A stretch of DNA of 64,000 nucleotides from IMG/VR virus record IMGVR_UViG_3300009093_000035, positions 62,001 to 126,000 of that record; one strand, 5' to 3'. How positions within the stretch are numbered: the stretch's first letter is position 1; each line of letters begins with the position of its first letter. This document shows, piece after piece, positions 21,620 through 63,807 of the stretch. A model generated the notes under the pieces. It was not told where the DNA came from, ran no database searches, and worked only from the letters and a program-made list of their open reading frames with translations. The position numbers were made by a program, and so were the translations under genes.

Positions 21620-21943
21620 TCAGCTCTTCAGAGCGATCGTGTCGGCCACGTCGTCGCGGATGTCCTTCATCGTCGAGAGAGTGGCGTCGAGAAGCTTCAC
21701 GGCGGTGAGGAGATCTTCGCCGGAAGACATTCGAGCCTTGCTCAAGATCTTGAAACACTCCCAGACGTTGAGGTTCGCTGCCTTCAGTTCGACGGCGCGT
21801 CCTTCGAGGAAGCGACGCTGGATGAGGGACATTTCGCCCCAATCGACCCGCCCCTCCTTCAGGAGGGGAAGGATCGAAGGACGAAGCTCCGGCTTCGCGT
21901 GAGCGAGACGGATCAGCTTCGAACGAAGGTGACGTTCCTTCAC
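21620..21943 (-). CDS. IRLAH-tag protein (107 aa)
   Basis: N-terminus LRSKLIRLAHAKPELRPSILPLLKEG. Confidence 0.8.
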   Translation of the reverse strand: MKERHLRSKLIRLAHAKPELRPSILPLLKEGRVDWGEMSLIQRRFLEGRAVELKAANLNVWECFKILSKARMSSGEDLLTAVKLLDATLSTMKDIRDDVADTIALKS

Positions 21944-21952
21944 GGGCTCTCC

Positions 21953-24900
21953 TCAGGAGGGGTTCTGGACAGAGACGCGGAACGTCATCTGGATGTAGAG
22001 CAGCGGGAAGACCGGGACGTAGAAGGCGTTCACGAGAACCGCCGTCGGATCTTCCGGGTCGGTCGCCACGGTGATACCCGTGAAGCTCGTGATGATCTGT
22101 TCCTGGACCGCTCGCTTGAACATCTCGGAGAGACGTCCCTCGATCTGGCCGAGGATCTGCGGGAGGAACTTGACACCGATGAACGGGTCGAGTTCCGCTC
22201 GCGCGCGCTTCTGCATGTCGTCGGCGATCTGGATGACCGTCGGGATCCTCGACAGGATGTTCGACATGTCCGACGTGAGGCCGTGTCGGATCCGGAGGAA
22301 GGGAAGACGCTCCTCCAGGACCGTGACGCCGCGCTGAGCGACCTGGTTGGCCTGGACCGCGTCGAGACGCCGCGCGAGAGCCGTGAAGCCCGAGAGCTGG
22401 CGACCCGTCCACGGCGTGGCCGAGTCGATCGAGGGCGAGGTCGTGCTCGCCGCGACCGCAGCCGCGAGGTAGCGACCGTCCGAGAGGTACTGCTTCGAGT
22501 TCCCCAGGGCGTCGGTCAGCGAGAAGGTGACGATGTCCGGGTAGATGAACCGGACGCGGCTCGCGCCGGTCGCCTGAGCGATCGTCCCGGCCTGGATCGG
22601 CTGGGTGCCCGAGGCGTAGCCGAAGATCGCCGTCCGCTCCGCACGGTAGCGGATCGAGGACTGGACGTCGCAGTGGATGGCCGTCTGCTTCGCGAGGTTC
22701 GCCGTCGCCGGGGTGAGGAGGACGATCACGGTCGGGGAGATGTTCCCCGGCAGAGAATCGCCTTCGAGCGCCCGGAGAGCGTCGAGGTACGTCTGCTCGC
22801 TCGCCTGGGACGATCCCGGGGTCTTCTTGACCTGGTAGGTCGCGATCACCGAGGAACCGTTCAGGAACGAGAAGTAGGCCGCGAGGGAGAGCGGGTTGTC
22901 GGGGCTGACGTCACCGTACTCCGCCACGACGTCCGAGAGACGCGAGAAGAACTTCGGGGTGAAGTCCTGCTTCTCGAAGTTGTAGCTGACGTAGTAGACC
23001 GTTCCGATCGAGGGCTCGTCGCCCGTCTTCTTGAAGGTCTCGACGAAGGCCGAGTCGCCCACGACCACGCCGTTCGTGTTCGTGACGATCAGCTCGATAC
23101 CCGGGACCGCGAGGGTCGGGATGTTGCCGTCGGTGGTGAAGGTCTTGCTCGACCGGAAGGTGAGCGTCGCGAGGGCGCCAACCGGGTACGGGATCCCGCC
23201 GTCGCGCGGAAGGATCGTGAAGACCAATCCCGTCACGTCGTCGTAGTAGGTCTGACCCACCACGCCGTCCTGACCGACGCCGTTGTTGAAGACCGAGGTG
23301 TTGGCCGAACCCGAGCCCGAGGTCGGATCCGACGAGGTCACGAAGAACCCGTCGATCGCCGCCTCGCCCGAAGCCCCGTCCGCCGACGTGATCAGGAGCA
23401 TCGTCCCGGTCACGAGAGCGTTGTGGGACGTGGCGTCGGCGAAGTCGATCGAGGAACCGACTCCGAGCGTCTGGCTCTGGAAGTAGAGGTAGACGTTGTT
23501 CGTCGAGTCCTTCTGGATACCGGCGAGAGCGCGGCCCGCGAAGTAGTTCACGTCCGGGGTCGCGAAGGCGGTCATGAAGGTCACGAAGGCGCCAGACGCC
23601 CCCGCGTGGTTCATGAGCACCGAGCCCATCTGGAGCGCCGAGACCGACGTCGGAGCCGCCGAGCTGTCGGGGGTGAACCCGAGGGTGTCGTTCGCGCTTC
23701 CCGATCCGATCACGAGGGTCGAAGCCGGACCGACTCCGCCACCGGTGAGGCGAATCGAAGCGCCTTCCTGAAGGACTCCGACCGTCGCGGAAAGACCCGC
23801 CGCCACGATCGCGGCGTTGATCTGGCCGAGGACCGAGCCCGCGACCGTGACCGGCCCGAGAGCCGTATCCGTCCCGGGACCCGAGGCCGCGAAGACGCAG
23901 GTCACGAGACCGCCGCCCGCCGTGAAGGTCAGGACGTTGTTCGCGGGGTTGCTCGGATCCGACCCGTCGAAGAAGGTGACGTTCGGCTGACCGTCACGGC
24001 TGTCGCCGAACGTCGCCGCAGCGACCTGACCGCCCGACCAGCCCGTGAGGGCGAGAAGGGTGGGGGCCTTCACGTTCGCGCCGTAGGCCGCTTCCGCCGT
24101 GACTCCGTTGAGGAGACCGGACTTCACCGCGCCGGTTCCACCCTGGAGGGTGATTCCGGCCTGGGCGAGAGCGGAGTTGAAGGCGATCGAGTTCCCGCCG
24201 ATGAAGAGGCGGTTCCGGAGGATGATCCGGTCGTAGGGGAGGCGACCTGCCGTCGTCGTCACCGTGTAGCGACGAGCGATCGGGCCGTTGTAGACCTTGA
24301 CCTGGTCGCCGTTCGTCGCAGCGGCCGTCGAGAGACCGGCCAGGATCGCGAAGTCGCGAGCCGGAGTGGCGTTCGTGATGAACTCCAGGTAACCCGCAGC
24401 GTCGGCGCCCGCGAGCGTCGCCCCAGACCACGTCGCACCCGTGACGGTCGTCGTCGTGGTGATCGAGTTCGAGCCGAGGCCCTGGCTCTTCGCCGTGACT
24501 CGCATCGTCGTACCGGGGCCCTGAGCCGCCGAGACGACGGGGTTGAGCGTGGTCGAAGCCGCGTAGGTCGAGCCAGCGCCCGTTCCGAGGTTGATGGCGT
24601 TGATCAGGTTCGTGATCGAGGCCGCCGTCGACCCGCCGATCAGGACGTGTCCGTCCACGTCGGTGAGGACGGTCTGGAAGGTGTAGACCTTTCCGTTGAT
24701 GGTGACGGTCTGGGTATCCGTCGGCTGACCCGTGAAGGTCAGGAGACCCGTCGACCGAGCGATCGTGAGGGTGAACCGGATCTGACCCGAGGCGAGAGCC
24801 GAAGCCGTCACCGACCCGAGGAGACCGCCCGTGGCGTTGATCGTGGCCAGCTGGGTGTTGAGCTGGGCGACGAGAGCGCCTACCGAGGCGTAGGTGCCGG

Positions 24901-27259
24901 GGGTGAGGGTGACCGTCTGGATACCCGACGCGCCGGACACGCTTCCCGTGTAGTGGAGAGAGAGGCGGTCGTACTCGTTCGCCGCGACGGTGTACGCGGT
25001 GAACTGACCCGCTCCGTCGTAGCGGGACTCGTGACCCGCCGTGAGAACCGCCGCGTTGATCGCGGAGACCCAGGTAGCCGCCGTCGCCGATCCGACGGTT
25101 CCCGTCGAGACCGAGACCGGGACGCCGTCCACGACCATGTTGATCGTGTCGTCGACTCCGGAGGTGAGGCCGTAGGTGGTCTCACCCGTCGCCGGGTCGT
25201 ACTTGATCTCTTCGCCGAGAAGCGAGGCGAACGCGCCGGCTCGATTCCCGCCCGTCGGAGACGAGAGGTCGATACCAGCCGCGATACCCGTCTGGGCCGG
25301 AAGCCCGTCGATCGTGAGACGGAGGGCGTCGGAGATGTTGTCGATCGTGTAGTACGGCTGCGGGCCGAGGTTGGTGAACCGGGCCGGGGTCTCGTCGCTT
25401 CGAGCGAACTCGACCGTGACGGTCTCCTCGACGGGGACGCCGCCTTCGATCCGCGCGTCCGGGAAGAACTCCGAACCCGAGGGGAAGTTGATCTGGACCG
25501 TCGTGAGGTCAGAGCCCTTCCCCGTGAGGAACACGTCGAATAGCGAGGCTCCTGACCCGTTCACGAGGGAGTAGGTTCCGATCCCGCCCGCGCCCGCCGT
25601 CACGTTCGTGAGCGTGTAGGCGTGGCTCGAACCGATGTTCGCCTGGTCGACGAGGGTGTTGTAGTAGAAGGTCGCGTAGACCGAGGCGCCTTCCGGCACC
25701 GGGGACTTCAGCGTGATCGAGGAAGTCGTGTCGTCGACCTTCAGGACCGTGACCACCCCGCGAGCGAGAGCGTCCTGGACGCCGAAGCCCCAGTAAGCCT
25801 TGATCAGGTCCGGACGGGTCGTCGCGAGATCCGAACGGCCGTTCGAGACCGTGAGGAAGAGCGACTCACCGAGCGGGTTGCCGCGACCGTTGCCCGTCGT
25901 GGGCTGGAACGGAAGCTGGAAGACCGTCCGACTCTCGACCGCGACCGGGCCGGTGTTGTCCACCGTCGGGGTGCAGGAGGCCATGAAGACCTGGTTGTCG
26001 ACGAGCGTCGCCTGGATCTGGGACGTACCGAGCGTCACTCCGCCTTCGGTGTGGGTCGCGGGGGAAACGAGCGCCGCCGTACCCCAGACGATCACGTCAT
26101 CCTTCAGGACGTACGAGACGCCCTGGACGAAGGTGCCGGCCGTCGACCCGTCGGGGGTGAGACCAACCTGGGTGATCGCCGTGACGCCGATGTTGGCGAG
26201 GTAGTCGAACGTGTCCTGCCAGGTGTTGAAGTAGTAGCGGATCTTCACCGTCGAGGTCTTCGCCGGAGCGAAGGGGAGCGTCACGGCGCGAGCCGTTCCG
26301 TTCACAGCGCTCGGGATGACCTGGACTCCGTCCACCGTGACGACCACGTCCGCCGGGTTCGTCGTCGTGAGACCGCCGCCGTTCCCGTCCACGATCGGGC
26401 CGTTGAACACGTAGAAGGTACGGTTCCGCGACGTCGAGGCGTTCGGCACGAAGCCGAGCGTCGTATTCGCCGTCCCCGTTCCGATCACGATCGACTGGTC
26501 CGCCGAGAGGCGGAGGCAGACCTGACCGAGGTTGTTCACGAAGGTCGAAGCGACCAGCGAGCCGATCCCCGCAGTCCCGTTGATCGTGGCCGCCACGACC
26601 GCCGCCGACACGGACGGGGCCGACGAGGGCATCGTGACCGTGACGAAGGAGAGCCCGTCCACCGAGAAGGTGAACTGGTCGTTCGCGCCGAGGATGAAGG
26701 CGAAGTTCTGGCCGGCCTGGCCATCGATCACGGCCGCGTCCGAGGAGACCTGGTCCGAGACGTCGTCCGTCGTCAGGGTGTCGGTCCGGTCGAAGAAGTA
26801 GGTGCAGCGGACCGAGTCCGTCGGAAGCGGCGCCTCCGCGATCTCGACGATCCCCTTCGCCGCGTCGAGTCCGAGGACCACGACCGGGAAGTTGTTGATC
26901 AGGACCGAGACCGAACTCGTGTCGGTCGCGAGCGTCCCCGTCCCGTCGCCCGAAACGAGCGGAAGGTTGCGGACCTGGAACTTCGTGATCGTCCCGTCGA
27001 AGTCACCGAGGGTGACCAGGCCGCTCGGGGAAACGTTGAGAACCGCCCTTCCCGACTCGTCCTCTTCCGTGACCTGCTGGTCGATCGTCGAGGACGAGCC
27101 TCGGACCACCGGCAAGTTCTGACGAGACAGGATCTCCGTACCCGTTCCGACGAGAACGGTGATACGGGCGGGGACAGGCACCGGTGTGTTCGGGACCCCG
27201 AAGAACGTCTGGGTGTAGACGCCCGGGGGTGCATATCCGCCACGAAGAAGACTCGGCAT
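21953..27259 (-). CDS. Contractile tail sheath protein, unusually large (~1768 aa)
   Basis: N-terminal PPGVYT motif; C-terminal sheath domain (LAAAVAA ... RIRHGLT ... ADDMQKRARAELDPFIG ... VNAFYVPVFPL); long beta-rich insertion; followed by the tube gene. Confidence 0.88.
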   Translation of the reverse strand: MPSLLRGGYAPPGVYTQTFFGVPNTPVPVPARITVLVGTGTEILSRQNLPVVRGSSSTIDQQVTEEDESGRAVLNVSPSGLVTLGDFDGTITKFQVRNLPLVSGDGTGTLATDTSSVSVLINNFPVVVLGLDAAKGIVEIAEAPLPTDSVRCTYFFDRTDTLTTDDVSDQVSSDAAVIDGQAGQNFAFILGANDQFTFSVDGLSFVTVTMPSSAPSVSAAVVAATINGTAGIGSLVASTFVNNLGQVCLRLSADQSIVIGTGTANTTLGFVPNASTSRNRTFYVFNGPIVDGNGGGLTTTNPADVVVTVDGVQVIPSAVNGTARAVTLPFAPAKTSTVKIRYYFNTWQDTFDYLANIGVTAITQVGLTPDGSTAGTFVQGVSYVLKDDVIVWGTAALVSPATHTEGGVTLGTSQIQATLVDNQVFMASCTPTVDNTGPVAVESRTVFQLPFQPTTGNGRGNPLGESLFLTVSNGRSDLATTRPDLIKAYWGFGVQDALARGVVTVLKVDDTTSSITLKSPVPEGASVYATFYYNTLVDQANIGSSHAYTLTNVTAGAGGIGTYSLVNGSGASLFDVFLTGKGSDLTTVQINFPSGSEFFPDARIEGGVPVEETVTVEFARSDETPARFTNLGPQPYYTIDNISDALRLTIDGLPAQTGIAAGIDLSSPTGGNRAGAFASLLGEEIKYDPATGETTYGLTSGVDDTINMVVDGVPVSVSTGTVGSATAATWVSAINAAVLTAGHESRYDGAGQFTAYTVAANEYDRLSLHYTGSVSGASGIQTVTLTPGTYASVGALVAQLNTQLATINATGGLLGSVTASALASGQIRFTLTIARSTGLLTFTGQPTDTQTVTINGKVYTFQTVLTDVDGHVLIGGSTAASITNLINAINLGTGAGSTYAASTTLNPVVSAAQGPGTTMRVTAKSQGLGSNSITTTTTVTGATWSGATLAGADAAGYLEFITNATPARDFAILAGLSTAAATNGDQVKVYNGPIARRYTVTTTAGRLPYDRIILRNRLFIGGNSIAFNSALAQAGITLQGGTGAVKSGLLNGVTAEAAYGANVKAPTLLALTGWSGGQVAAATFGDSRDGQPNVTFFDGSDPSNPANNVLTFTAGGGLVTCVFAASGPGTDTALGPVTVAGSVLGQINAAIVAAGLSATVGVLQEGASIRLTGGGVGPASTLVIGSGSANDTLGFTPDSSAAPTSVSALQMGSVLMNHAGASGAFVTFMTAFATPDVNYFAGRALAGIQKDSTNNVYLYFQSQTLGVGSSIDFADATSHNALVTGTMLLITSADGASGEAAIDGFFVTSSDPTSGSGSANTSVFNNGVGQDGVVGQTYYDDVTGLVFTILPRDGGIPYPVGALATLTFRSSKTFTTDGNIPTLAVPGIELIVTNTNGVVVGDSAFVETFKKTGDEPSIGTVYYVSYNFEKQDFTPKFFSRLSDVVAEYGDVSPDNPLSLAAYFSFLNGSSVIATYQVKKTPGSSQASEQTYLDALRALEGDSLPGNISPTVIVLLTPATANLAKQTAIHCDVQSSIRYRAERTAIFGYASGTQPIQAGTIAQATGASRVRFIYPDIVTFSLTDALGNSKQYLSDGRYLAAAVAASTTSPSIDSATPWTGRQLSGFTALARRLDAVQANQVAQRGVTVLEERLPFLRIRHGLTSDMSNILSRIPTVIQIADDMQKRARAELDPFIGVKFLPQILGQIEGRLSEMFKRAVQEQIITSFTGITVATDPEDPTAVLVNAFYVPVFPLLYIQMTFRVSVQNPS

Positions 27260-27408
27260 GGTTCTCGCGCTCCTGAGTCTCGGGTTCAAACCGAGCTACC
27301 ACGGATGAATTCAACCTCTCCCGTCTATTGGAGAGGAAACGAAAAGCGCGAGAGATGGGGTACGTAGTTCGAGTAGGGTTTGGCCACGGCGTCCGAAGCG
27401 CCGGGAAA

Positions 27409-27876
27409 TCATGGGCGAAGGACGGCCTTCTTCTGGTGTTCGGATACCTGAGGAAACTTCTCCCGGAGCGCCTTCTCCATCTTGGAGTGGAACGAACGAG
27501 TTCGTTCCGAGGCGGCCCTCTGCTTGGGAGTCATGACTCCATAGGAGCCATCGATCTTCTTCGCGAGGTCGTATCCGGTCTTCCCGGACGCCTCGATCAC
27601 ATCCCTCTTCGCCTTCTGTCGAGAAGCGATGGTCTTCCACTTCGTCTTGGAGTCCTCGCCAACGATCCGATCGATCTGGTAGTCGTGAGACGAGATCCCC
27701 GACATGGGAGCCGAGAGACCCTCGGTCGCCACCGATGAAGTGACTGAGAACCCACGAGGCATCGTCTTCTCCGCCGGGGCTCCGCAAGACTCACACTTCG
27801 TCGAGTTGGTCGCACCCGCGACCCTCGCCGAGAAGTTCAGTCCGCAAGATCCACACTGGTATCGGAAGACTGGCAA
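27409..27876 (-). CDS. FmdB-like zinc-ribbon protein
   Basis: MPVFRYQCGSCG ... CESCG at the N-terminus, followed by a basic extension. Confidence 0.7.
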   Translation of the reverse strand: MPVFRYQCGSCGLNFSARVAGATNSTKCESCGAPAEKTMPRGFSVTSSVATEGLSAPMSGISSHDYQIDRIVGEDSKTKWKTIASRQKAKRDVIEASGKTGYDLAKKIDGSYGVMTPKQRAASERTRSFHSKMEKALREKFPQVSEHQKKAVLRP

Positions 27877-27923: not shown

Positions 27924-29042
27924 TCATTTGATCTCTTCGAAGTCAGCCTTGCCGACGAACCAAGGATCTCGGAAGGGACTGAGGGCCAGATCCTTCGGAA
28001 CGTTCTTGATGCTCTCCTGGTAGGAGAAGATCCGAGAGACGATTGGGACGAAGAGGAACCAATCCGATTGGACTGTAACGGACATTGACGACCCGTAGAA
28101 GTAGTCGTCCCCGTTCTCGTCGTAGATCTCCTCGGTCTCTCCGCCCATGGAGACGTCCTGGATGTCGATCCCCTCTTCGATCAGATTCGGCCGAAGGATC
28201 GCCCAGAGGAACATGGCCGTACTGTCCGAGATCTCCGCCTGAGAGTTCACGTCCCGAGCGACGATGTCGATGTCGACCCCCAACTCCCACTTCCCGCCGT
28301 ACTCCAGGTACGCGGGCTCCCGGATCGCCGAGACGAGGATCGCCCAGCGATCTCCCTTCTTGTATCGATGCCCGAAGACCATGGTGACGCCCGGGATCGC
28401 CTTGTTCATCCCCGAGCGAGGGAGAACCTTCCAGGGTCCTGTGCTAACCCCCGCCGTCCGATAGTCGGCCGAGAGAGCCATGTTGTTTGCCAACGGCGTG
28501 TTAAGGAAGATCGTGGTCTGATCACTCCCCACCACGTAGTCGACCCCTGGCTTCAGTTCGCGGGCGCTGGGCAGCTCGTAGATCCGAAGACTCCCCTCGT
28601 AAGGGACGGCCTGGATCGAACCTTCCGAGTTCGTGGTCATCGTCACCCGCTCGTCTCGAACGTCGAGAAGAGGGTCGATGTAGAACTCATCCTCCGAAGT
28701 CATCTCGCAGTAGTAGACGCCCGGAGCTACGGGGAAGCGTCCCCCGTTGTCCTGGATCGCGATCGCATCCTCTCGAACCCACTCGACCGAAAGGCCCGGG
28801 TACCCGGGGATTCGGGCGAGGGTCACGTACGAGGCGACCGTACCCATGAAGTTGTCCGGAGAGAACTGAACCTTCGTCGCCTGTCCGGTCTTCAGGATGA
28901 TGCCGAACTGTGGGCGCTCTTCGAAGCTGTACTTGCCCTGGATGTTATCTACCAGGTCCTGATACTTCGGGTCGAGAGACCAGAAGGCTCGGAGTTCCTT
29001 GATGAACCGCCTGCGAGTCGCTTCGGTGAGATGGAAGTACAA
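27924..29042 (-). CDS. Neck / tail-completion-like virion protein (372 aa)
   Basis: Position upstream of the sheath; no diagnostic motif recognised. Confidence 0.45.
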   Translation of the reverse strand: MYFHLTEATRRRFIKELRAFWSLDPKYQDLVDNIQGKYSFEERPQFGIILKTGQATKVQFSPDNFMGTVASYVTLARIPGYPGLSVEWVREDAIAIQDNGGRFPVAPGVYYCEMTSEDEFYIDPLLDVRDERVTMTTNSEGSIQAVPYEGSLRIYELPSARELKPGVDYVVGSDQTTIFLNTPLANNMALSADYRTAGVSTGPWKVLPRSGMNKAIPGVTMVFGHRYKKGDRWAILVSAIREPAYLEYGGKWELGVDIDIVARDVNSQAEISDSTAMFLWAILRPNLIEEGIDIQDVSMGGETEEIYDENGDDYFYGSSMSVTVQSDWFLFVPIVSRIFSYQESIKNVPKDLALSPFRDPWFVGKADFEEIK

Positions 29043-31423: not shown

Positions 31424-32797
31424 TTAGTAGTTCTGGTTTTCGCCAGTACCCGTACGCCAACGCTGCTGTACCGGACCCGGAACGTTGTCCTTGTTGGTCG
31501 CCTCGGGAAGATCTGCGTCCGGGGTAACCGGCCACGGCGGATCCGTACGAGCGTCGTAGGTCTCGCGGGGCGGGTTGTACGTGTACCGGGTCTGGGGCCA
31601 CGGAAGGTTCGGCGAAGCGATCGTTCCGTCGATCGGGACCTCGTATCGAATGTCCTGAGAGTCGAGGTACTGAATGGTGAAGTGCTGCTGCAGGACGTTA
31701 CCACGATTGGTGGGACGTCGGACCGGCCCGAGCGAGTACCGGTCGTTGTTCTGTTTGATCACGAAGTCGCGCTGGGAAACGATCGGAGTGAAGGTCATGA
31801 ACACGTCGTAGGAGTGTTCTTTCCGCCGTCCGTTCGGTCCCTGAGAGATCTTCCTCTCCGCGTCGTCCGGAGCCATGATGATGTCGTAGGGGCCTTCGAA
31901 GCCTCCCACGAATCCGGTCCCGTAGCAGATCTTGCATCGGCTCGACGGTTGCTTCGAGTAGGCCCGGACGCGCGCATCCAGCTCCAACCTACACTCGCAC
32001 CGACGACCCGCCACCTTCCTCACAAAGAGCTTCACCCGCTCCCCGCCCTCGGTGAGGATCCAGTTGTTCCGGCGAATCGCCTCGCGCCAGATGTAGTCGA
32101 GCTGTTCGATCTGCATGTCCGACGCAGGCATCGTAACATTCAGAGGAGTCTCGACTAGACCTCCTGGAGCGTCATCACTCTCCGCAACCGTAGTGACGCG
32201 GTAGAAAGACTTCTTGTCCACCCCCGGCTGGACGAGGTTCTTCAGGGTGTAGTAGGTCACGAGGACTTCGTCGTCCGGCCCCGTAGGCAACGGGGCGAAG
32301 GCGAAGCGATCGTTCCTGGGGTCGATGTCCCCGGCGTCTCCTAGCGTGATCTCGTTCGAGGGACCGAACACCTCGAAGATACGGGCCGGGACGCCATTGA
32401 TCGTGACGATCACGTCTTCGAGGGAATTGGCCGGGGTCCCTTGGGTCCTCGGCTTGTACATGGGGTAACGAGTCCGTAGCGTCCACCGACGCAGGTTCGG
32501 GGCGTTCCCTCGCGACTGCCATCCCGTATCCCAGGGAATGATCTCCTGGTTCACGAGGGCGACGTCGGTGTAGTCTCGGAAGAAGGTTCCCCCGACCGGA
32601 AACGAGTTCACTCGACGGAAAGGACCGCGGTCGGAGGCGTCCGAACGATAGACGTTCACACCTACGACCGCGTACGAAGAGTTCCCTCCGAGAAGAGAGG
32701 GATCATCCCACCGAATGTCGAAGACACCCTTGTCAAACGGGCTCACCACCATGACGTTCATGGGGGGGAGGGGATACGTGATAGGGTCCCAGACCAT
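31424..32797 (-). CDS. Neck / head-closure protein with N-terminal FN3-like domain
   Basis: ORF 31424..32818 (likely start 32797 after AAGGGA). DIRWDDP ... VGVNVYRS is FN3-like; C-terminal CxC ... CxxCxGTGF-G-GF pattern seen in phage neck proteins. Confidence 0.55.
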   Translation of the reverse strand: MVWDPITYPLPPMNVMVVSPFDKGVFDIRWDDPSLLGGNSSYAVVGVNVYRSDASDRGPFRRVNSFPVGGTFFRDYTDVALVNQEIIPWDTGWQSRGNAPNLRRWTLRTRYPMYKPRTQGTPANSLEDVIVTINGVPARIFEVFGPSNEITLGDAGDIDPRNDRFAFAPLPTGPDDEVLVTYYTLKNLVQPGVDKKSFYRVTTVAESDDAPGGLVETPLNVTMPASDMQIEQLDYIWREAIRRNNWILTEGGERVKLFVRKVAGRRCECRLELDARVRAYSKQPSSRCKICYGTGFVGGFEGPYDIIMAPDDAERKISQGPNGRRKEHSYDVFMTFTPIVSQRDFVIKQNNDRYSLGPVRRPTNRGNVLQQHFTIQYLDSQDIRYEVPIDGTIASPNLPWPQTRYTYNPPRETYDARTDPPWPVTPDADLPEATNKDNVPGPVQQRWRTGTGENQNY

Positions 32798-32825
32798 GGC
32801 TTCCCTTTCGGGAAGCATAGGTTGG

Positions 32826-38199: not shown

Positions 38200-38679
38200 T
38201 CAGCGAGACTTCTTCTTCAAGTAGTCGGAAGCGCCCTTTGCCGTGAGCTTCGCGTTCTCCGCTACTTCCTTCGCGGCCTCCTGAATCAAGTTCTCGATAT
38301 CCGAGACCTTCTCGTCGGCGTCCAACAAGGTGTCGACGACCTCTTGAGCCTTCTTCGAGTTCATGTCCGCGAGAGCTTCCATCATGTCGCCATACAGCTC
38401 ATCGAGTTCCCCCTGGCCGACCTCGGCGGTCTTCCCAAGAAGCGGAAGGATCTCCGAACGGATCTCCGGCTTCTCGTGAGCGAGACGAATCAGGGATCGG
38501 CGAAGAGAGGAATGCTTGTTCACTTGGATAGCCCGTTCTTGGTTCTCGGCTTTGTCTTTGGAGGGATGGCGTCCCAACAGCCGGTCCCCGTCGCTCGTGT
38601 AGAGACACCACTTCTGCTCGTCGGCGGGACGGTCGTCCTGATCGGAGGGACGACACTCATGGATGACCGCCTTCTTCAT
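38200..38679 (-). CDS. IRLAH-tag protein (internal tag), 159 aa
   Basis: Small N-domain KWCLYTSDGDRLLGRH..., then LRRSLIRLAHEKPEIRSEILPLLGKTA, then an acidic helix. Confidence 0.8.
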   Translation of the reverse strand: MKKAVIHECRPSDQDDRPADEQKWCLYTSDGDRLLGRHPSKDKAENQERAIQVNKHSSLRRSLIRLAHEKPEIRSEILPLLGKTAEVGQGELDELYGDMMEALADMNSKKAQEVVDTLLDADEKVSDIENLIQEAAKEVAENAKLTAKGASDYLKKKSR

Positions 38680-38682: not shown

Positions 38683-39123
38683 TCAGTCGATGAAGCCGTA
38701 GTCCCGGCCGCGACCGGAATCGTTGGACCAACCCCACCGACCCTCTTCCGGGTCGAAGCCGACGCGACCGATCGACTTGCCGTTCGTGCCGCCGTTCGGA
38801 TGGACGTAGTCCCAAGAAAGAGACCCGCCGAGGCCGCCCTGGGCGTCCGACCACCACTCGATCGAGATCGAGATCTCCGAGAAGAGAGACGAGAAGCCCT
38901 TCGGCACCTCGACCTTGACTGAGTTCTCGTTGAGGTTCGACCACTTCACCGGAGCGTCGATCTTCTTGAGAAGAACGTTGATCGCTTCGAGGGCCTTCTT
39001 CTTCGCCTCGTCGTCGAGCTGAGGAAGCCGACCGGCCTTCTTCTCCAGAAGGGGAAGGATCTCCGAGCGGATCTCGGGGTTCGCGTGGGCGAGACGAATC
39101 AGGGAACGACGGAGGGATGCCAT
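38683..39123 (-). CDS. IRLAH-tag protein, 146 aa
   Basis: MASLRRSLIRLAHANPEIRSEILPLLEKKAG. Confidence 0.8.
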   Translation of the reverse strand: MASLRRSLIRLAHANPEIRSEILPLLEKKAGRLPQLDDEAKKKALEAINVLLKKIDAPVKWSNLNENSVKVEVPKGFSSLFSEISISIEWWSDAQGGLGGSLSWDYVHPNGGTNGKSIGRVGFDPEEGRWGWSNDSGRGRDYGFID

Positions 39124-39156: not shown

Positions 39157-39759
39157 CTACTCCGCGGCGATCCCGTAGAACAAGAAGCCGACCGCCGAGC
39201 CCTGGAGCACGATGTCTCCACGGACCTCCCAAGAGCCGAACCCGAACTTGTCCTTCTCGCCCGTGTCTCGGACACTTCGGATCTTCCCCGGAAGAGCGCC
39301 GCTCGCCCGAGCCCAAGTCCCGAAGGCGGATCGAGCCTCCTCGTCCGAATCGGCTCGAAGCACGACCTTCTTCGCCTTCGTCTCAGCTCGGCCGGAGACG
39401 ACTGGGATCGCAAACGCCGGACCCGACTTCGGGTTGTGTCTCACGTCCTGATTGGCGTAGGTCTTTGCCTCCGCAAGGGTCATGCCCTTCGCCCTGAGGA
39501 CGAACCCCTTCCCGGCCTTCTCCAGGATCGTCCCCGAGTACCCGCCCTCGGAATCGTCGTCACGATACGACCGAACGTCGTTCTCCGCGTCCTGTACGAG
39601 CTTCTCGAAGACCTTCTTCGGATCCGTCCCCTCGCCGTACTCCTGGAACTCGGCGCCGCCTGCGGTCTTCGAGAGGAGCGAAAGAAGTGCCGGTCGTAGC
39701 TCGGGCTTCGAGTGCGCGAGACGGATGAGCTTTCGACGCAGCTTGAGGTCGGGGGTCAC
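39157..39759 (-). CDS. IRLAH-tag protein, 200 aa
   Basis: LRRKLIRLAHSKPELRPALLSLLSKTAG. Confidence 0.8.
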   Translation of the reverse strand: MTPDLKLRRKLIRLAHSKPELRPALLSLLSKTAGGAEFQEYGEGTDPKKVFEKLVQDAENDVRSYRDDDSEGGYSGTILEKAGKGFVLRAKGMTLAEAKTYANQDVRHNPKSGPAFAIPVVSGRAETKAKKVVLRADSDEEARSAFGTWARASGALPGKIRSVRDTGEKDKFGFGSWEVRGDIVLQGSAVGFLFYGIAAE

Positions 39760-39793: not shown

Positions 39794-40492
39794 TCAGGGC
39801 TGAGGCGTCGTCGGCTTCTGGAGCCGTTCGGAGACCTCGATGATCTGGTGGGCCGGAATCCAGCGCGTATCCCGCTCCAGAGGCGGGCGAACGTTTCGAC
39901 CAGTGTTCTGGTTCATCGTCCAGAACACCCAGCGAAGACGGTCCTCCTCTTCGCGCGAGCGGAACTTCTCCTTCACGACCCCGACCTTCCCGGTCTTGAA
40001 GTTCACCCCGTTCACGGTCTCTTCGCGAACCGGGCCGTCCTTGTACTGGATCCGAACCTTGTCGCCCGGCTTCAGGTTCAGCTCTTCGAGCTTCTTCCGA
40101 CCCGGCTCCGCAGCGTCGTCCTTCGCGTCCATCCGGTCCTGACGACGGTCGAGAAGCTCGGCCTTCTCCTTCTCGGTCTTCGCCTTGTCGGCCTTTCCGA
40201 CGTAGCGGATCACCTTCGCGTTCGCGTCGTAGCGGGAACCCTTCGCGGGGAAGCGAAGGTCCCCCGCCGACGAAGAGAGCAGAAGTTCGGCGTTCCCGGT
40301 TCGCTTCGTCGTGACGCTGACGATCGTAGCGGGAATCCAACCCTTCCGCGTCTGGACTTCGACGGAGTCCCCTTCGTGGAAGTACCCGTCCGAAGGCGCA
40401 GCTTCCTTCAAGATCGGGATGAGGTGCTCGCGAAGCTCGGGCTTCTCGTGAGCGAGACGGATCGTCTTCGAGCGGAGTTCGTCGTCGTTCAT
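39794..40492 (-). CDS. IRLAH-tag protein with two SH3/KOW-like repeats, 232 aa
   Basis: LRSKTIRLAHEKPELREHLIPILKEAA; GDSVEV ... WIPATIV and LKPGDKVRIQY segments. Confidence 0.8.
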   Translation of the reverse strand: MNDDELRSKTIRLAHEKPELREHLIPILKEAAPSDGYFHEGDSVEVQTRKGWIPATIVSVTTKRTGNAELLLSSSAGDLRFPAKGSRYDANAKVIRYVGKADKAKTEKEKAELLDRRQDRMDAKDDAAEPGRKKLEELNLKPGDKVRIQYKDGPVREETVNGVNFKTGKVGVVKEKFRSREEEDRLRWVFWTMNQNTGRNVRPPLERDTRWIPAHQIIEVSERLQKPTTPQP

Positions 40493-43324: not shown

Positions 43325-43543
43325 CTATTCGTTCAGGAAGATCCGGATGGAGCACCGAGGACACCCGACGTACTTCCGGTCTGACGAGACCATGTAGAAG
43401 GGATCCTCTTCGGTATGGATCTCCGAACGACCGAAGGTGAACTCGGCCTTACATCGACCGCAGGTCGCCCGACCGATCTGAAGCTCCCCGCAGCGAGAGG
43501 CGCGAGACTGACGACGAGCTTTCCGTTGGGAGCGCCCGCTCAC
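43325..43543 (-). CDS. Small Zn-finger-like protein
   Basis: CGRC ... CPRC; GTGA-coupled to the ligase stop. Confidence 0.55.
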   Translation of the reverse strand: MSGRSQRKARRQSRASRCGELQIGRATCGRCKAEFTFGRSEIHTEEDPFYMVSSDRKYVGCPRCSIRIFLNE

Positions 43544-48500: not shown

Positions 48501-48844
48501 TGTCGGCCTATCGCGACCCCCCTGGACGTTCCCCGTGTCCGTACCACTGTCGTCAAATAGCAGCGGCCGGATGGGGTGAGGGATGGACCGGGTTGTGGAA
48601 CTGGGAGTGCGTAATGTGTAAGGCGCGCGCTCCCATGTGGAGGTGGATTCTTCTGCCCTTCCTCCCTACCCTCTCTCACATACCGCTGGGACCCGGTCCC
48701 TACCATGTAGTCGACCCGAGACTGACGGAAGCTGAAGCTCTGAGAGTCGGGTGGACGAAAGAACAGATCCAGAAAGAGCGAAAGACGGGCTTACCGAATC
48801 AGCTCGATCGGTGGAAAGAATGGACCTGGGGAGAGCTTCCTTAG
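48500..48844 (+). CDS. Hypothetical Trp/Cys-rich protein (~114 aa)
   Basis: ATG overlaps the upstream TGA; C-terminal part of ORF 47990..48844. Confidence 0.5.
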   Translation: MSAYRDPPGRSPCPYHCRQIAAAGWGEGWTGLWNWECVMCKARAPMWRWILLPFLPTLSHIPLGPGPYHVVDPRLTEAEALRVGWTKEQIQKERKTGLPNQLDRWKEWTWGELP

Positions 48845-49416
48845 AAGGTCGCCCCGAGCTTCCGTAGGTACGCGAGAAGGCCATCGACCTTCGGATTCGG
48901 TACCTTGCTCTTCTGGATATCGATGAGCTTCCCGATCTGAACCGGGTCCGTCTCCTCGATCGAGATCTCCCCGGTGTCCGAAGCCCGAAGAGTTGCAACG
49001 GGCCTCGGGAGCCTCTCGTTGAAGAACACGAAGAGGAGATCTCCGCCGGCCGGGTCGTGCTTCACGATCACCGGATCTCGGACGTAGAGACCCTTCGCCG
49101 ACCACTGGATGTCGTTCCGAACGTTGGAGATCGCCCGGTAGGCCGGCGACATGAGGAGAGCGAGGTTCGCTTCGAGCTTTGCCTGAAGGAAGTTCGCCGC
49201 TTCGTCGTCTCCGATCTCCCGAAGATGGGGGATCAGGTCGTCCGAAGTGACGAACCCGGTCGAGCGAACCGCCTCGTTGATGCGCTCCTGTAGCTCACCC
49301 GAGAACTCGGCCTTCTTCGAAACCGGCTCCTTCGCTTCCTTCAGGAGCGGTAGGAGGATCGGACGAAGCCCGGGGTTCTCGTGGGCCAGGCGGATCATCT
49401 TCGAACGGAGAGTCAT
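48841..49416 (-). CDS. IRLAH-tag protein, 191 aa
   Basis: MTLRSKMIRLAHENPGLRPILLPLLKEAK. Confidence 0.8.
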   Translation of the reverse strand: MTLRSKMIRLAHENPGLRPILLPLLKEAKEPVSKKAEFSGELQERINEAVRSTGFVTSDDLIPHLREIGDDEAANFLQAKLEANLALLMSPAYRAISNVRNDIQWSAKGLYVRDPVIVKHDPAGGDLLFVFFNERLPRPVATLRASDTGEISIEETDPVQIGKLIDIQKSKVPNPKVDGLLAYLRKLGATF

Positions 49417-52282: not shown

Positions 52283-53179
52283 TCAGAGGAACGAGCGGGG
52301 ACTCAAGACTCCGCGACCAACCGCCGGACCGAAGGCCGAACGGATACCAATCCCGTACTTCGGCTGCTGGAGACCGCGAATGAACTTCACGGTCCGAGCT
52401 TTCGCTTCGGTGGCCTTATCGAACTGAGACTCGGCGTTCTGCTTCAGAGACTCGTACTTCGCCGACTTCTCGATCGAGAGCGAAACTCCGCCGATCGAAT
52501 AGTCGAATTCGTCCGCCACCCAGTTGATCGAGAGCGCGAAACAAGCGTGAACGATCGCCTCCCAAAGGATAGCGGTCCTCCAGACAGCCTTCTCGGCGCA
52601 GAGCTTGTCCAAGGTGTTGAGATCTGGGGTCGTCGGGGGGAACATGTTCCACCAGTCGAGACCTCGTTCGAGGTACTCCAGAAGCTCGGCGTCTTCCCAG
52701 ATCTGACCGAAGACCTTGTTGTAGTTGCCGATGTTTCCCTCGGCCTCCGGCGGGCGGAAGTGGTAGAACTTGTCAGGGTTCTGATCGCGAAGAAGGAGAC
52801 GAAGCTTCGCGATCATCGAGGTCACGCAAAGCGAGTAGGTCGGGGTCGCCACGACTCCTGGAGAAACCACCGCCCACTCCTGAACCACTTGCTGAAGAGG
52901 GCTTCCAGCGTACTGCTTGAAGTTCCAGCGGATGACGTAGGTCCCAGGCGTCGCGCTCGTGGGTACTTGGAGGGAGGCGTAGTATTCCCCCACCGTCGGG
53001 TTCAGCGGGATTCGATTCGCCGACCCGATCAGAATCTCAGTCTCCGGCGGGCCGGGGCTGACGTAGTAGATCGCGTAGGTGATTTCGTACGCGTTCGAAG
53101 CGATGGAGTTGGAGTCCGTCAGGAAGATGTCGAGGTCTCCCTGACCGAGCGTCGTCCCAGGTAGGAATGCTACTGCCAT
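52283..53179 (-). CDS. Head-tail adaptor/neck-like protein with N-terminal Ig-like domain
   Basis: VGEYYASLQVP ... GTYVIRW Ig-like strand pattern; C-terminal LRLLLRD ... DYSIGGVSLSI helical adaptor-like region. Confidence 0.55.
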   Translation of the reverse strand: MAVAFLPGTTLGQGDLDIFLTDSNSIASNAYEITYAIYYVSPGPPETEILIGSANRIPLNPTVGEYYASLQVPTSATPGTYVIRWNFKQYAGSPLQQVVQEWAVVSPGVVATPTYSLCVTSMIAKLRLLLRDQNPDKFYHFRPPEAEGNIGNYNKVFGQIWEDAELLEYLERGLDWWNMFPPTTPDLNTLDKLCAEKAVWRTAILWEAIVHACFALSINWVADEFDYSIGGVSLSIEKSAKYESLKQNAESQFDKATEAKARTVKFIRGLQQPKYGIGIRSAFGPAVGRGVLSPRSFL

Positions 53180-59336: not shown

Positions 59337-59338
59337 GA

Positions 59339-60094: not shown

Positions 60095-60142
60095 GGCTTC
60101 ATAAGCCGCCAGCCCATAGCCTTAATCTCGTTGGGACCGAGA

Positions 60143-61294: not shown

Positions 61295-61342
61295 GAGACA
61301 GAGTCCTCCAAGCGGGACTCTACCGAGCATCCAATGTCTTGA

Positions 61343-62551
61343 TCAGCCGGGGAGATACTCCGCGGCGATGGACACCACTTCCTTCTTGCTGAGGCCGCTC
61401 GGACCGATGAGATCGGCCACCTCGCCGTCGTAGAGAACGGACATGGCGAGATCGTGGGCGACACTCTCGATCCCCTCGCCGGAATCCCCCGGGTCCCAAT
61501 CAGACCGAGCGTCCTTTGCCCAGGCCTGAATCGCCTTGAAGAGTTTCGACTTCGCCGCCGACTGGCTGAGAGGACGCTGGAGAGCACTCGGATCTACGAC
61601 TCCCTTCGGAGCCTTCTTGATCGCGCCCCTCTTCAGGAGGTCTCGGATGAACTCGTTCGGAAGACTCTTCTTCTGCCAGGACTGCTGATCCGGATTCAGC
61701 ACCTCGGCCATGAAGGCGTCTCTCTTCACCTTCGGCATCCCCGCCGCGATCAGACCCCCGACGATGTCCTGAGCGAGGCCCACGTAGGCGTTCAGGTTGT
61801 CCCCGTAGATACGAACCTCGGTTCGAGGGTACGCTGCGAAGCGCTCGACCACGCGGGCCGGGCTCGCGGTCTTCTTCAGGTAGATCTTGTCTTCGAGCGT
61901 TCCGAACCCCGTAGCCCCCGTGTACCACCCGTTCGGAAGGCGCGCAGAGGTGATTCCCGGAACCGGCGGTTCGGGAGTCACGTAGATGTAGTCGGCCGTG
62001 AGCTTCGTGACGATCAACCCCTGGCCGGCCTGGAAGCCTCCCCGAGAGAGCTTCACCGGTTCCGTCACTGTGAGACGGTCATTGACCGCGAGCTTCGGCG
62101 GAAGGGTGTACCCCTCTTCCTTCATCTTGAAGTAGCGCGGGTACGCCTGACGGACGGTTCGCTCGTTCGAAGCAATCATCGAGTCCGAGTAGGTCTTCCC
62201 GAAGAGAAGCGGATACCACTCTGGGTGCTCGAAGAAGGGGATCGAGGCCGCCTCGTCCTCCTCGAACCAGACGTATCCGCCGGCCTTCTCTCCGATTCGG
62301 TAGGCCGGAGCCGAAAGGACCTTCCGAGCCACGCCGTCCGAGATCCCCATCCCCCCGTGGCTCGCAGTCGAGACCCAACTCACCCCTCGAAGCGAAGGAT
62401 GGTCGTACATCGTCTGGACCGTTCCCCACGGAGACTTCGGAGCCTTCGGATCGTTGTAGCTCCAGTTGCGAGTACGGGGAGAAGCCTTCTTGTCCATGAC
62501 GCCCGGCTCCTTGTCCCAGTTCGCGAGTTCTTCGTAGGTAGCGATGCTCAT
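61343..62551 (-). CDS. Multidomain protein with N-terminal DUF7007-like domain and RVV/RF tag (~402 aa)
   Basis: SPWGTVQ ... VSTASHGG ... WFEEDE pattern; KKASP and KKTASPARVVERF separate the domains. Confidence 0.7.
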   Translation of the reverse strand: MSIATYEELANWDKEPGVMDKKASPRTRNWSYNDPKAPKSPWGTVQTMYDHPSLRGVSWVSTASHGGMGISDGVARKVLSAPAYRIGEKAGGYVWFEEDEAASIPFFEHPEWYPLLFGKTYSDSMIASNERTVRQAYPRYFKMKEEGYTLPPKLAVNDRLTVTEPVKLSRGGFQAGQGLIVTKLTADYIYVTPEPPVPGITSARLPNGWYTGATGFGTLEDKIYLKKTASPARVVERFAAYPRTEVRIYGDNLNAYVGLAQDIVGGLIAAGMPKVKRDAFMAEVLNPDQQSWQKKSLPNEFIRDLLKRGAIKKAPKGVVDPSALQRPLSQSAAKSKLFKAIQAWAKDARSDWDPGDSGEGIESVAHDLAMSVLYDGEVADLIGPSGLSKKEVVSIAAEYLPG

Positions 62552-62553
62552 GA

Positions 62554-63807
62554 TCAGAGCTTCTTCATGACGTCGGTCCACTCTTCGAGGGACTTCCGGT
62601 TCCGACCCACATCGGCCTCCGTAGCGGGCTGGACCACTCCGTTGATCGTGAATCCGGAGCTGCCGTTGGCGTTCGCCTCCAGGAGCTTCTCGTAGAGTTT
62701 CACCTTCATCGGGACGAACTTCTTCAAGATCGTCGTGTCCGCTCCGGGGAAGTCCGAGAGGAACTCCGACATCTGAGCCGCCTCGGAATACTCCCCGAGG
62801 CCGGTCCACTGAACGTGGCCCTTCTCGTCGAGGTACATCGCTCCGGCGAACTTCAGGTAGGTCGAAGCCTTCGGCTTGTTCCAGCGGCCCGTCTTCGGGT
62901 CCATCGTCTGGGAGAGGAAACGGTAGCCCTTCCCGGAGTTGAACTCCAGCCAGAACTTCGCCTGGGTTCGGAGCTTGAACCCGTAGGGGTAGTCGTCGAC
63001 CACATAGGCCGAGTTCGGATCAGTGTGGCCGTAGAGGGGCTTCTTCGTCGAGGCCTTCTTCTCGAACTTCCCGCCCTTGGACTCGATCTTCTTCCGATCC
63101 GCGTCGGTGAGCCGATCCTTCTTGGCCTTGGAGTCCATCATCTCCTGCCACTCGGCTTCGTCTTCGTTCTTCGCCGGTCGCCAGGCGATCACTTCCTTCT
63201 CGGAAGCGGCGTGGTTCGACGGCATCCAGAGATCGTTCTCCTTCGCCGCGAACTCCTCCAGCTTCTGGAGGAACTTCATGTCCGCATCATCGAGAGCCTC
63301 GTAGGCCTCGTCGAGCGTCTTGTACTTCTCGTCGAAGTAGTCCCCCACCATCGCCAAGAACTTCTTCTCCACGTCGGACTCGGCGCCCTTCATGTGGTTC
63401 TTGATCCCCTTGATCATGCTCTGAGTCATGATCCCGCCCGTCTTCGAGAGGAGGGGGAGGAGAAGGGGGCGAAGCTCGGGCTTCTCGTGAGCGAGCCGAA
63501 TCGTAGCTGAACGGAGGTTGGTCATGGCTCGCTTCTCGTTGGGATGTTCTCGGAGATACCGCTCGCGAATAGAGGGATTCTCCCACTGAGGGAAGATGAA
63601 CTCCATCCCCTCCTGCTCGTAGGGAACGCGATTCTTCTTCAGCCAAGCGACGAACAGGTTGGCGGTGCCCCTGGTCCCCCACTCGACTACCGCCCGCGAA
63701 TCGTTCGCCTGGGGATTGCGCGTCGAGTAACTTGAGTTGCCGAACGTGTTCTCATCGTCCGCATCTCTCATCGCTCTGACGAGATCTTCGAATTCGTGGA
63801 AAGCCAT
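62554..63807 (-). CDS. Multidomain IRLAH-tag protein (417 aa)
   Basis: Internal EKRA-MTNLRSATIRLAHEKPELRPLLLPLLSKTGG; C-domain YGHTDPNSAYVVDDYPYGFKLR after EKKAS. Confidence 0.75.
   Translation of the reverse strand: MAFHEFEDLVRAMRDADDENTFGNSSYSTRNPQANDSRAVVEWGTRGTANLFVAWLKKNRVPYEQEGMEFIFPQWENPSIRERYLREHPNEKRAMTNLRSATIRLAHEKPELRPLLLPLLSKTGGIMTQSMIKGIKNHMKGAESDVEKKFLAMVGDYFDEKYKTLDEAYEALDDADMKFLQKLEEFAAKENDLWMPSNHAASEKEVIAWRPAKNEDEAEWQEMMDSKAKKDRLTDADRKKIESKGGKFEKKASTKKPLYGHTDPNSAYVVDDYPYGFKLRTQAKFWLEFNSGKGYRFLSQTMDPKTGRWNKPKASTYLKFAGAMYLDEKGHVQWTGLGEYSEAAQMSEFLSDFPGADTTILKKFVPMKVKLYEKLLEANANGSSGFTINGVVQPATEADVGRNRKSLEEWTDVMKKL

What the first reader, a model, noticed from the sequence alone, without database searches (positions are those of the whole stretch)
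21620..63807. A ~23-aa peptide tag (LRxxxIRLAHxxPELRxxLLPLL) shared by seven otherwise unrelated proteins: candidate capsid-targeting / ejection address system
Seen directly: the tag occurs in 21620..21943, 38200..38679, 38683..39123, 39157..39759, 39794..40492, 48841..49416 and 62554..63807. It is at or near the N-terminus in five and internal in two. The sequences after it show no similarity to one another by eye, and it is always followed within a few residues by K-x-A/G (KEG, KTA, KKA, KTA, KEA, KEA, KTG). Established: T4 internal proteins use a short N-terminal capsid-targeting sequence removed by the prohead protease. Inference: this is a portable sorting tag that loads diverse cargo domains into the head, or onto one scaffold/receptor protein, for delivery into the host. 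I do not recognise this motif from any named family.
Basis: partly seen in the sequence, partly recalled or inferred. Interest (0 to 1): 0.88.

Follow-up and report, generated by a model that had tools for sequence, protein, structure and literature searches.

The report
Portable address peptide in huge phages
Seven unrelated proteins of an uncultured huge bacteriophage carry the same 24-residue two-helix peptide, an undescribed tag found in thousands of proteins of this phage group, which most likely docks fast-changing accessory proteins onto one common partner, probably the assembling virus head.

Summary
Each carries L-R-x-x-x-I-R-L-A-H-x-x-P-x-L-R-x-x-L-L-P-L-L at 57-66 bits; the next best six-frame hit scores 4.4 bits. 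Synonymous differences show selection on the peptide, not a DNA repeat. The seven cargo parts are mutually unrelated.

The window is a huge phage: a 248.6 kb contig with an MCP 93% identical to that of the 485 kb LR745208.1. It holds the tail module. One tagged gene lies directly after the sheath gene.

The tag has no Pfam, PHROG or PDB-sequence match, and I found no paper on it. It occurs in 3183 protein clusters, 269 of them at E <= 1e-10. Only one of 50,697 phage records has it, and no isolate cellular genome.

It is usually N-terminal but also C-terminal, internal or in 2-5 copies. That does not fit a strict T4-type N-terminal propeptide.

Cargo turns over fast and includes domains typical of proteins delivered with invading DNA. 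In LR745208.1 a tagged gene lies between the scaffold-like gene and the MCP gene.

Best reading (about 0.45): a virion-loading address tag. The portable tag is supported. Capsid targeting and cleavage are unproven.

The parts
21620..21943 (-). Tagged ORF 1, 107 aa. The tag is at residues 5-28 (DNA about 21836-21931). The gene lies directly downstream of the tail sheath gene.
   Evidence: position relative to the sheath gene
38200..38679 (-). Tagged ORF 2, 159 aa. The tag is internal, at residues 58-88 (DNA 38413-38508). Residues 22-58 weakly match phrog_3684 (unknown function).
38683..39123 (-). Tagged ORF 3, 146 aa, N-terminal tag (DNA 39022-39117). It is the second gene of a tandem array of four tagged genes. 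Its cargo has a homologue in L010.
39157..39759 (-). Tagged ORF 4, 200 aa, GTG start, N-terminal tag (DNA 39649-39744).
39794..40492 (-). Tagged ORF 5, 232 aa, N-terminal tag (DNA 40385-40480). The cargo has two weak SH3/chromo-like matches.
48841..49416 (-). Tagged ORF 6, 191 aa. The tag starts at residue 2 (DNA 49318-49413).
62554..63807 (-). Tagged ORF 7, 417 aa. The tag is at residues 97-127 (DNA 63424-63519). Its C-terminal 160 aa are homologous to a protein that carries the tag at its N-terminus in another phage (L021).
61343..62551 (-). Untagged DUF7007 protein. Its likely ATG at 62551 lies just past the stop codon of tagged ORF 7. The same domain is fused to the tag in other phages.
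21953..27289 (-). Context: giant tail sheath protein, 1778 aa.
   Evidence: tblastn to annotated tail sheath genes of Tunturiibacter phage Tunturi_5, Rhodococcus phage Finch and others
20283..21074 (-). Context: virion structural protein, homologue of Tunturi_5 gp329.
   Evidence: E 5e-48
27924..29042 (-). Context: tail terminator, homologue of Tunturi_5 gp324.
31424..32818 (-). Context: minor tail protein, homologue of Tunturi_5 gp322.
52283..53179 (-). Context: head-tail connector, homologue of Tunturi_5 gp319.
   Evidence: tblastn E 3e-29

Best explanation
The tag is a self-contained peptide of 24-28 residues forming two helices broken at the invariant Pro14. It acts as a portable docking (address) module.

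Inferred mechanism: every tagged protein is recognised through this peptide by one common phage-encoded receptor. The receptor is most likely part of the assembling head (scaffold or core, inner shell surface, or portal). The phage thereby loads a hypervariable set of accessory and anti-defence proteins into the virion, to be delivered with the DNA.

Small disordered proteins carrying several tags would be multivalent adaptors or core fillers. Removal of the tag by the head maturation protease at the K-x-A flanks is possible but is not needed by the model.

Shown: the motif, its modularity, selection at the protein level, restriction to this phage clade, the predicted two-helix shape, fast cargo turnover, and tagged genes lying in head and tail modules.

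Inferred: the existence of one receptor, its location in the head, injection, and cleavage.
For: - Discrete motif with bimodal scores: 57-66 bits against 4.4 in the window; 49-65 against 7.5 or less in LR745208.1, where 11 ORFs carry it.
- Abundant synonymous differences.
- Cargo is unrelated: 63 ORFs fall into 51 clusters.
- 15 of 23 core positions are more than 75% conserved over 404 tags, which argues for one demanding binding partner.
- AlphaFold2: the tag alone is H2-12 / H14-27 at pLDDT 81. In a two-tag protein both tags reach pLDDT 87-95, the linker is disordered and pTM is 0.28, so each tag is autonomous and tag-tag packing is not predicted.
- Clade-restricted: 3183 clusters in metagenomes, one of 50,697 phage records, and only 8 MAG contigs of scattered phyla among 185,579 species genomes.
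- Virion context: a tagged gene follows the sheath gene directly. In LR745208.1 the order is protease, scaffold-like, TAGGED, 228 aa, MCP. In the window's own phage a tagged gene lies 2 kb downstream of the MCP gene on the same strand. 8 of the 9 known tagged genes of this contig lie in the roughly 62-150 kb structural region.
- Cargo domains include ART-PolyVal, DUF5710, DUF7007, DUF2958, WGR, a weak ParB-like nuclease match, pentapeptide repeats and RelA/SpoT. ART-PolyVal belongs to the repertoire of proteins delivered with invading DNA (PMC5512222). For the others this link rests on my memory of where they occur.
- 0 of 7 tagged cargos have a homologue in LR745208.1 against 25 of 46 untagged genes (p = 0.011), although the MCP is 93% identical. 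T4 internal proteins show the same pattern of diverse cargo with a conserved targeting sequence (PMC3012670, PMC5694885).
- Tandem arrays of tagged genes recur.
Against: - There are no virion proteomics and no cultured member, so encapsidation is untested.
- Genes next to tagged genes in 37 loci are mostly replication, repair or metabolism genes; only 2 of 94 are MCPs. In LR745208.1 only 4 of the 11 tagged genes lie in the structural region.
- C-terminal, internal and multi-copy tags differ from every characterised phage capsid-targeting propeptide.
- The scaffold-like protein and the protease carry no tag, and a helix-1 sub-profile does not pick them out.
- Tags within one genome are barely more alike than tags between genomes (0.662 against 0.641, p about 0.04). 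There is thus little sign of co-evolution with a genome-specific receptor.
- The K-x-A flanks may be no more than helix extensions.
Confidence: 0.45

Rival explanations
1. Intracellular sorting or assembly tag. The peptide recruits tagged proteins to a structure that is not the virion: a replication factory, a condensate, a compartment, or a phage hub or cytoskeletal protein such as the conserved volactin-like actin. Multi-tag disordered proteins would act as multivalent scaffolds.
For: - Many proteins carry 2-5 tags separated by K/E/D-rich disordered linkers that hold further short motifs.
- Neighbours of tagged genes are mostly non-structural.
- An actin homologue is conserved in both tag-bearing phages.
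Against: - AlphaFold2 predicts no tag-tag packing (pTM 0.28).
- Tagged genes do sit inside head and tail operons.
- The cargo repertoire looks like proteins needed at the moment of entry.
- LR756511.1 has a volactin homologue (32% identity) but gave no tag match in the tblastn scan of the phage records.
Confidence: 0.2
2. Host-directed linear motif. The peptide binds one host machine (for example RNA polymerase, the ribosome, a chaperone or a protease), so that diverse phage effectors are all brought to that target.
For: - Mosaic disordered proteins built of several short conserved motifs resemble viral proteins that hijack host hubs.
- The cargo is conflict-type.
Against: - No cellular genome carries the motif, so it is not mimicry of a host ligand.
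- 24 highly conserved residues are far more than a typical hub-binding motif needs.
- The tag is nearly identical across many divergent phages.
Confidence: 0.12
3. Recognition element for a processing, degradation or handling factor: a degron for timed proteolysis, a chaperone or usher signal, or an export signal.
For: - The tag usually lies at a terminus.
- K-x-A flanks are enriched on both sides and could be protease sites.
Against: - Internal and multi-copy tags are unusual for degrons or export signals.
- None of the seven window tagged proteins shows an N-terminal hydrophobic signal-like segment before or after the tag, judged by eye from the translations.
- I did not identify any dedicated export machinery in the parts of the window I annotated.
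Confidence: 0.08
4. RiPP-like leader peptide recognised by the nearby radical-SAM-like enzyme (33202-34683).
For: - A shared leader with variable downstream sequence.
- A weak Radical_SAM match 3.5 kb from the tandem array.
Against: - The cargos are proteins of 80-400 aa, some with recognisable Pfam domains, not core peptides.
- The radical-SAM-like gene has no homologue in LR745208.1, which carries 11 tags.
- Tags also occur C-terminally.
Confidence: 0.02

Closest known systems
T4 capsid targeting sequence (CTS) of internal proteins IPI-III and Alt
   Same: - A short shared peptide on otherwise unrelated, rapidly diversifying proteins, partly anti-defence (PMC3012670, PMC5694885).
- The genes are partly arranged in tandem.
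- The peptide is portable in principle.
   Different: - The T4 CTS is a strictly N-terminal propeptide of 10-20 residues, removed by the prohead protease gp21 (PMC5694885).
- This tag has 24-28 residues and two helices. It is also C-terminal, internal or in 2-5 copies.
- I know of no sequence relation.
- Cleavage is not shown.
Long N-terminal propeptides of ejection and inner-body proteins of phiKZ-like giant phages (SPN3US, 201phi2-1)
   Same: Giant-phage head proteins are thought to be targeted by removable N-terminal regions (PMC5694885).
   Different: - Those propeptides exceed 100 residues, are shared only between paralogues and are not a common motif.
- This phage is a different lineage, related to the Acidobacteriota phage Tunturi_5, with a small 291-aa HK97-type MCP.
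Encapsulin cargo-loading peptides, the C-terminal targeting tail of the HK97 protease, and the coat-binding helix-turn-helix of the P22 scaffolding protein (from my own knowledge, not tested)
   Same: - Short terminal peptides that dock cargo to the inside of an HK97-fold shell.
- They can sit at either terminus.
- They can carry foreign cargo.
   Different: - No sequence or significant fold match.
- The scaffold-like protein of this phage has its own, different conserved C-terminus.
Polyvalent proteins of phages and conjugative elements (Iyer et al. 2017, PMC5512222)
   Same: - Overlapping domain vocabulary, for example ART-PolyVal.
- A proposed role as effectors delivered with the DNA.
   Different: - Polyvalent proteins fuse 2-15 domains in one giant polypeptide.
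- Here single domains are separate small proteins, each with the same address peptide.

Membership tests
T4-type CTS | N-terminal propeptide of 10-20 residues | tested here: not met
   The conserved core is 23 residues plus flanks. Tags also lie at C-termini, internally and in 2-5 copies.
T4-type CTS | Shared by otherwise unrelated head-internal proteins | tested here: inconclusive
   The cargo is shown to be unrelated. A head-internal location could not be tested.
T4-type CTS | Removed by the prohead protease at a defined site | not testable with these tools
   K-x-A is enriched on both flanks (64% and 36% against 3% background), but it lies within the predicted helices. A head maturation protease exists.
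T4-type CTS | Directs encapsidation of cargo | not testable with these tools
   Only gene position speaks to this.
Any curated protein family (Pfam, PHROGs, PDB sequences) | Significant profile match over the tag | tested here: not met
   NCBIfam was not searched.
Polyvalent proteins | 2-15 effector domains in one polypeptide | tested here: not met
   Tagged proteins are mostly 100-400 aa. At most one or two families matched in any of the 17 proteins examined one by one; most members of the wider set matched none.
Polyvalent proteins | Domain repertoire such as ART-PolyVal | tested here: met
   An ART-PolyVal match in one tagged protein. DUF5710, DUF7007, DUF2958 and WGR also matched. Their link to mobile-element proteins rests on my memory.
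LRV / HEAT-like repeats | The tag matches the repeat profile | tested here: not met
   LRV and HEAT profiles hit only 2 and 1 of 115 tag-bearing proteins, and none of the 7 window proteins.
RiPP leader peptide | Short core peptide and a co-conserved modifying enzyme | tested here: not met
   The cargos are proteins of 80-400 aa, some with Pfam domains. The radical-SAM-like gene is absent from tag-bearing LR745208.1.
P22-type scaffold coat-binding helix-turn-helix | Helix-turn-helix fold matching the solved domain | tested here: inconclusive
   Two helices are predicted. Foldseek gave no significant match for a 32-residue model.

The most novel reading that the evidence does not exclude
Huge phages of this clade may run a protein-sorting code built from short linear motifs. 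The 24-residue tag is the main 'address'. At least four other recurrent short motifs are shuffled within small disordered multi-tag proteins, which would act as adaptors. Together they would organise which of a rapidly changing arsenal of effectors is brought to a given phage structure, whether capsid, factory or filament. This would be a modular interaction network of a kind so far described mainly for eukaryotic cells and their viruses.
Probability: 0.15. Interest if true: 0.9.

Novelty: new variant of a known kind. Interest (0 to 1): 0.72.

Why it matters
- If the tag loads proteins into the capsid, it marks the set of proteins these uncultured huge phages deliver with their DNA. Those proteins could then be listed from sequence alone: thousands of candidate anti-defence and host-takeover proteins that are otherwise unannotated.
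- It would also be a natural encapsidation tag that works at either terminus, which is useful for loading cargo into phage-derived particles.
- If it docks elsewhere, it is still the first widespread, sequence-defined sorting peptide in a phage lineage. It would give a direct handle (peptide pull-down) on the internal organisation of phages that cannot be grown.

Tried and rejected
- Plus-strand translation of the given coordinates gives nothing.
- A DNA repeat or gene conversion is rejected because of the synonymous differences.
- Pfam and PHROGs scans of the tagged proteins gave no family for the tag.
- A sequence search of the PDB with the tag profile found nothing. Foldseek with the tag model gave no significant match.
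- The search for homologous proteins restricted to the tag region returned only 7 hits each time, because of its word and length filters.
- A cellular origin or host mimicry is rejected. A strict pattern gave no confirmed match in 185,579 species genomes. A degenerate pattern found 8 MAG contigs of scattered phyla, probably mis-binned phage DNA.
- The broad tag alignment was too variable for the search for related loci.
- Tag-tag self-association is not predicted.
- 'LIRLAS' near the protease C-terminus and 'CIRIAS' in the scaffold-like protein looked like tag helix 1, but a helix-1 sub-profile does not rank them above noise.
- A bipartite promoter motif (TCGTT ... CTAT) is not enriched. Only a short YTAT element is.
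- Genome-specific co-variation of tags is weak.
- The radical-SAM-like neighbour is rejected as the tag's partner.
- The cargo proteins have no homologues in cultured phages.
Full report
**Observation**

The coordinates are correct, but all seven ORFs are on the minus strand. Each contains L-R-x-x-x-I-R-L-A-H-x-x-P-x-L-R-x-x-L-L-P-L-L.

- A six-frame regex finds exactly these seven places.
- An HMM built from them scores them at 57-66 bits, against 4.4 bits for the next best six-frame hit in the window.
- In 30-70% of the codons that encode the same amino acid in two copies, the codon differs. The conservation therefore acts on the peptide and not on a DNA repeat.
- Five tags start at residue 2-6. 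Two are internal, at residues 58 and 97, and the upstream parts have coding-type GC3.
- With the tag masked, the seven proteins show no BLASTP similarity to one another.
- K-x-A/G follows the tag in all seven.

**What the window is**

The window is 62% G+C and nearly all genes lie on one strand. It belongs to IMGVR_UViG_3300009093_000035, a contig of 248.6 kb.

The volactin-like gene is 69% identical, and the MCP of the same contig 93% identical, to those of LR745208.1, a 485 kb uncultured huge phage.

The 1778-aa ORF at 21953-27289 is a giant tail sheath. The region is syntenic with the cultured Acidobacteriota jumbo phage Tunturi_5 (PMC11924767):

| Tunturi_5 gene | Window coordinates |
|---|---|
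| minor tail protein gp322 | 31424-32818 |
| tail terminator gp324 | 27924-29042 |
| gp325 | 27409-27876 |
| tail sheath gp326 | 21953-27289 |
| virion structural protein gp329 | 20283-21074 |
| head-tail connector gp319 | 52283-53179 |

 Tunturi_5 itself gave no tag match. The tagged 107-aa gene lies directly after the sheath gene.

**How widespread the tag is**

- A pattern scan of IMG/VR found 38 loci in about 20 large phage contigs, holding 63 non-redundant tagged ORFs that fall into 51 cargo clusters.
- A profile search of 1.84 billion cluster representatives found 3183 proteins at E <= 1e-3 and 269 at E <= 1e-10.
- Only one of 50,697 GenBank phage records has the tag: LR745208.1, with 11 copies scoring 49-65 bits against 7.5 or less for everything else.
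- Among 185,579 species genomes, only 8 MAG contigs of scattered phyla match.
- Pfam and PHROGs give nothing for the tag, a profile search of PDB sequences gives nothing, and the paper library gave no report of the motif.

**Anatomy**

Over 404 tags, positions 2-24 are strongly conserved, and A10, R17 and P14 are nearly invariant. The flanks prefer K-[DE]-A-[SA] before the tag and K-[EK]-A-[AG] after it.

In the locus set, 50 of 63 ORFs carry the tag within 20 residues of the longest-ORF start. About five more have a Met directly before the tag, and the usual form is M-[ST]-[TN]-L-R-S. Clear C-terminal tags (L030, L021), internal tags and multi-copy proteins also exist, for example L003:1813-5526 with three copies.

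The best-scoring representatives carry 2-5 tags separated by K/E/D-rich linkers that hold other recurrent short motifs.

AlphaFold2 predicts helix 2-12, a break, then helix 14-27 (pLDDT 81). In a natural two-tag protein both tags are confident (pLDDT 87-95), the linker is disordered and pTM is 0.28. Each tag is thus an autonomous element, and no tag-tag packing is predicted.

**Cargo**

Most cargo has no family. The families that did match are:

- ART-PolyVal, DUF5710 (two copies in L019:78-1463), DUF7007, DUF2958, WGR and a weak ParB-like nuclease match;
- pentapeptide repeats, RelA/SpoT, LRV and TFIIS_M.

ART-PolyVal belongs to the vocabulary of proteins delivered together with invading DNA (PMC5512222). 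For the DUFs this link rests on my memory of where they occur.

None of the seven window cargos has a homologue in LR745208.1, against 25 of 46 untagged window genes (p = 0.011). None has a homologue in any cultured phage. The tag is therefore conserved while the cargo turns over fast. This is the pattern described for T4 internal proteins (PMC3012670).

**Link to the virion**

- In LR745208.1 the gene order is head maturation protease (474 aa), K/E/A-rich scaffold-like protein (422 aa), tagged 134-aa protein, 228-aa protein, MCP. The MCP and protease assignments rest on homology to Tunturi_5. PHROG matches of the orthologues in L059 confirm them.
- In the window's own phage (L059) the same module lacks that tagged gene. 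A tagged 175-aa gene lies 2 kb downstream of the MCP gene on the same strand.
- 8 of the 9 known tagged genes of this contig lie in the roughly 62-150 kb stretch that holds the tail and head genes.
- Against this, the neighbours of tagged genes across 37 loci are mostly replication, repair and metabolism genes. In LR745208.1 only 4 of the 11 tagged genes lie in the structural region.

**Interpretation**

What is firmly shown is a portable, autonomous docking peptide, restricted to this phage clade and conserved at the protein level. Its extreme conservation over unrelated cargo argues for one common and demanding partner.

I consider loading into the head, and hence delivery with the DNA, the most likely role (about 0.45). 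The reasons are the T4 precedent, the type of cargo, its turnover, and the tagged genes inside head and tail operons.

It is not a member of the T4 CTS class. It is too long and it is not confined to the N-terminus. Cleavage is unproven, because the K-x-A flanks may simply extend the helices.

The rivals are listed below with their probabilities:

| Rival | Probability |
|---|---|
| Sorting to a non-virion structure or hub | 0.2 |
| A host-directed linear motif | 0.12 |
| A signal for processing or degradation | 0.08 |
| A RiPP-type leader, effectively refuted | 0.02 |

**Novelty**

The motif family appears undescribed. In function it is best filed as a new variant of phage cargo-targeting peptides, and the multi-motif adaptor proteins are an additional unexplained layer.

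Noticed in passing
window 29087-30115 (-): An actin homologue of the volactin family (PF25216, E 3e-72) lies inside the tail gene module, between the tail terminator and the minor tail protein. It is 69% identical in LR745208.1 and 32% identical in the 595 kb LR756511.1. This is a phage-encoded actin in huge phages.
   Followed up: partly
window 21953-27289 (-): The tail sheath protein has 1778 residues, which I judge to be several times the usual size. Only the two ends align to ordinary sheath proteins.
   Followed up: partly
P0001, P0009, P0010, P0012, P0041, P0075, P0078, P0097; L056 about 33041; L024, L029, L039: Small multi-tag proteins are mosaics of further recurrent short motifs, for example K-F-E-x-G-K-P-A-D-P-T-K-N-M-S...K-D-x-F-K, A-G-C-E-K-L-P-E-G-P-M-R-D-N-C, F-D-P-x-E-I-G...E-P-Y-M-K-G-x-F-T-Q, and G-E-V-P-E-A-F-K-K-Q-W. 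The regex scan found none of them in the window.
   Followed up: partly
window 61343-62551 (-): A DUF7007 protein whose likely start codon lies just past the stop of the tagged 417-aa gene. The same domain is fused directly to the tag in other phages, which suggests the two window proteins work together.
   Followed up: partly
L009:3079, L019:4010, L020:4001, LR745208.1 about 432.6 kb: One cargo family begins right after the tag with G-D-[VL]-I-P-F-[PAV]-G. This resembles, from memory, the D-D-D-I-P-F tip of bacterial SSB.
   Followed up: no
upstream of N-terminally tagged genes in L002-L038: A short element Y-T-A-T-[ACT]-[CGA] lies in the 60 nt upstream of the ATG in 49% of tagged genes against 13% of neighbouring genes. 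It may be a promoter element of one temporal class. A longer bipartite version was not enriched.
   Followed up: partly
L059 7339-8865; L055 6706-7974 (-): The scaffold-like protein between the protease and MCP genes is an extreme K/E/D/A-rich low-complexity protein with repeats of K-K-E-A-K-K-A-D-D. Its N-terminal region and its last 35 or so residues are conserved.
   Followed up: partly
window 33202-34683, 35668-38136, 43540-44658, 50532-51482 (-): A radical-SAM-like protein (weak match), a VWA-domain protein of 822 aa (phrog_2426), an RNA ligase with an OB domain, and a PLD-like protein with two HKD domains are interspersed with the structural genes.
   Followed up: no
window 473-5002, 7216-12270, 14147-17689 (-): Three further giant ORFs (1509, 1684 and 1180 aa) downstream of the tail genes have no Pfam or PHROG match. 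The 1684-aa ORF was also searched against PDB sequences without a hit. Two of the three are conserved in LR745208.1. They are probably baseplate or fibre proteins.
   Followed up: partly
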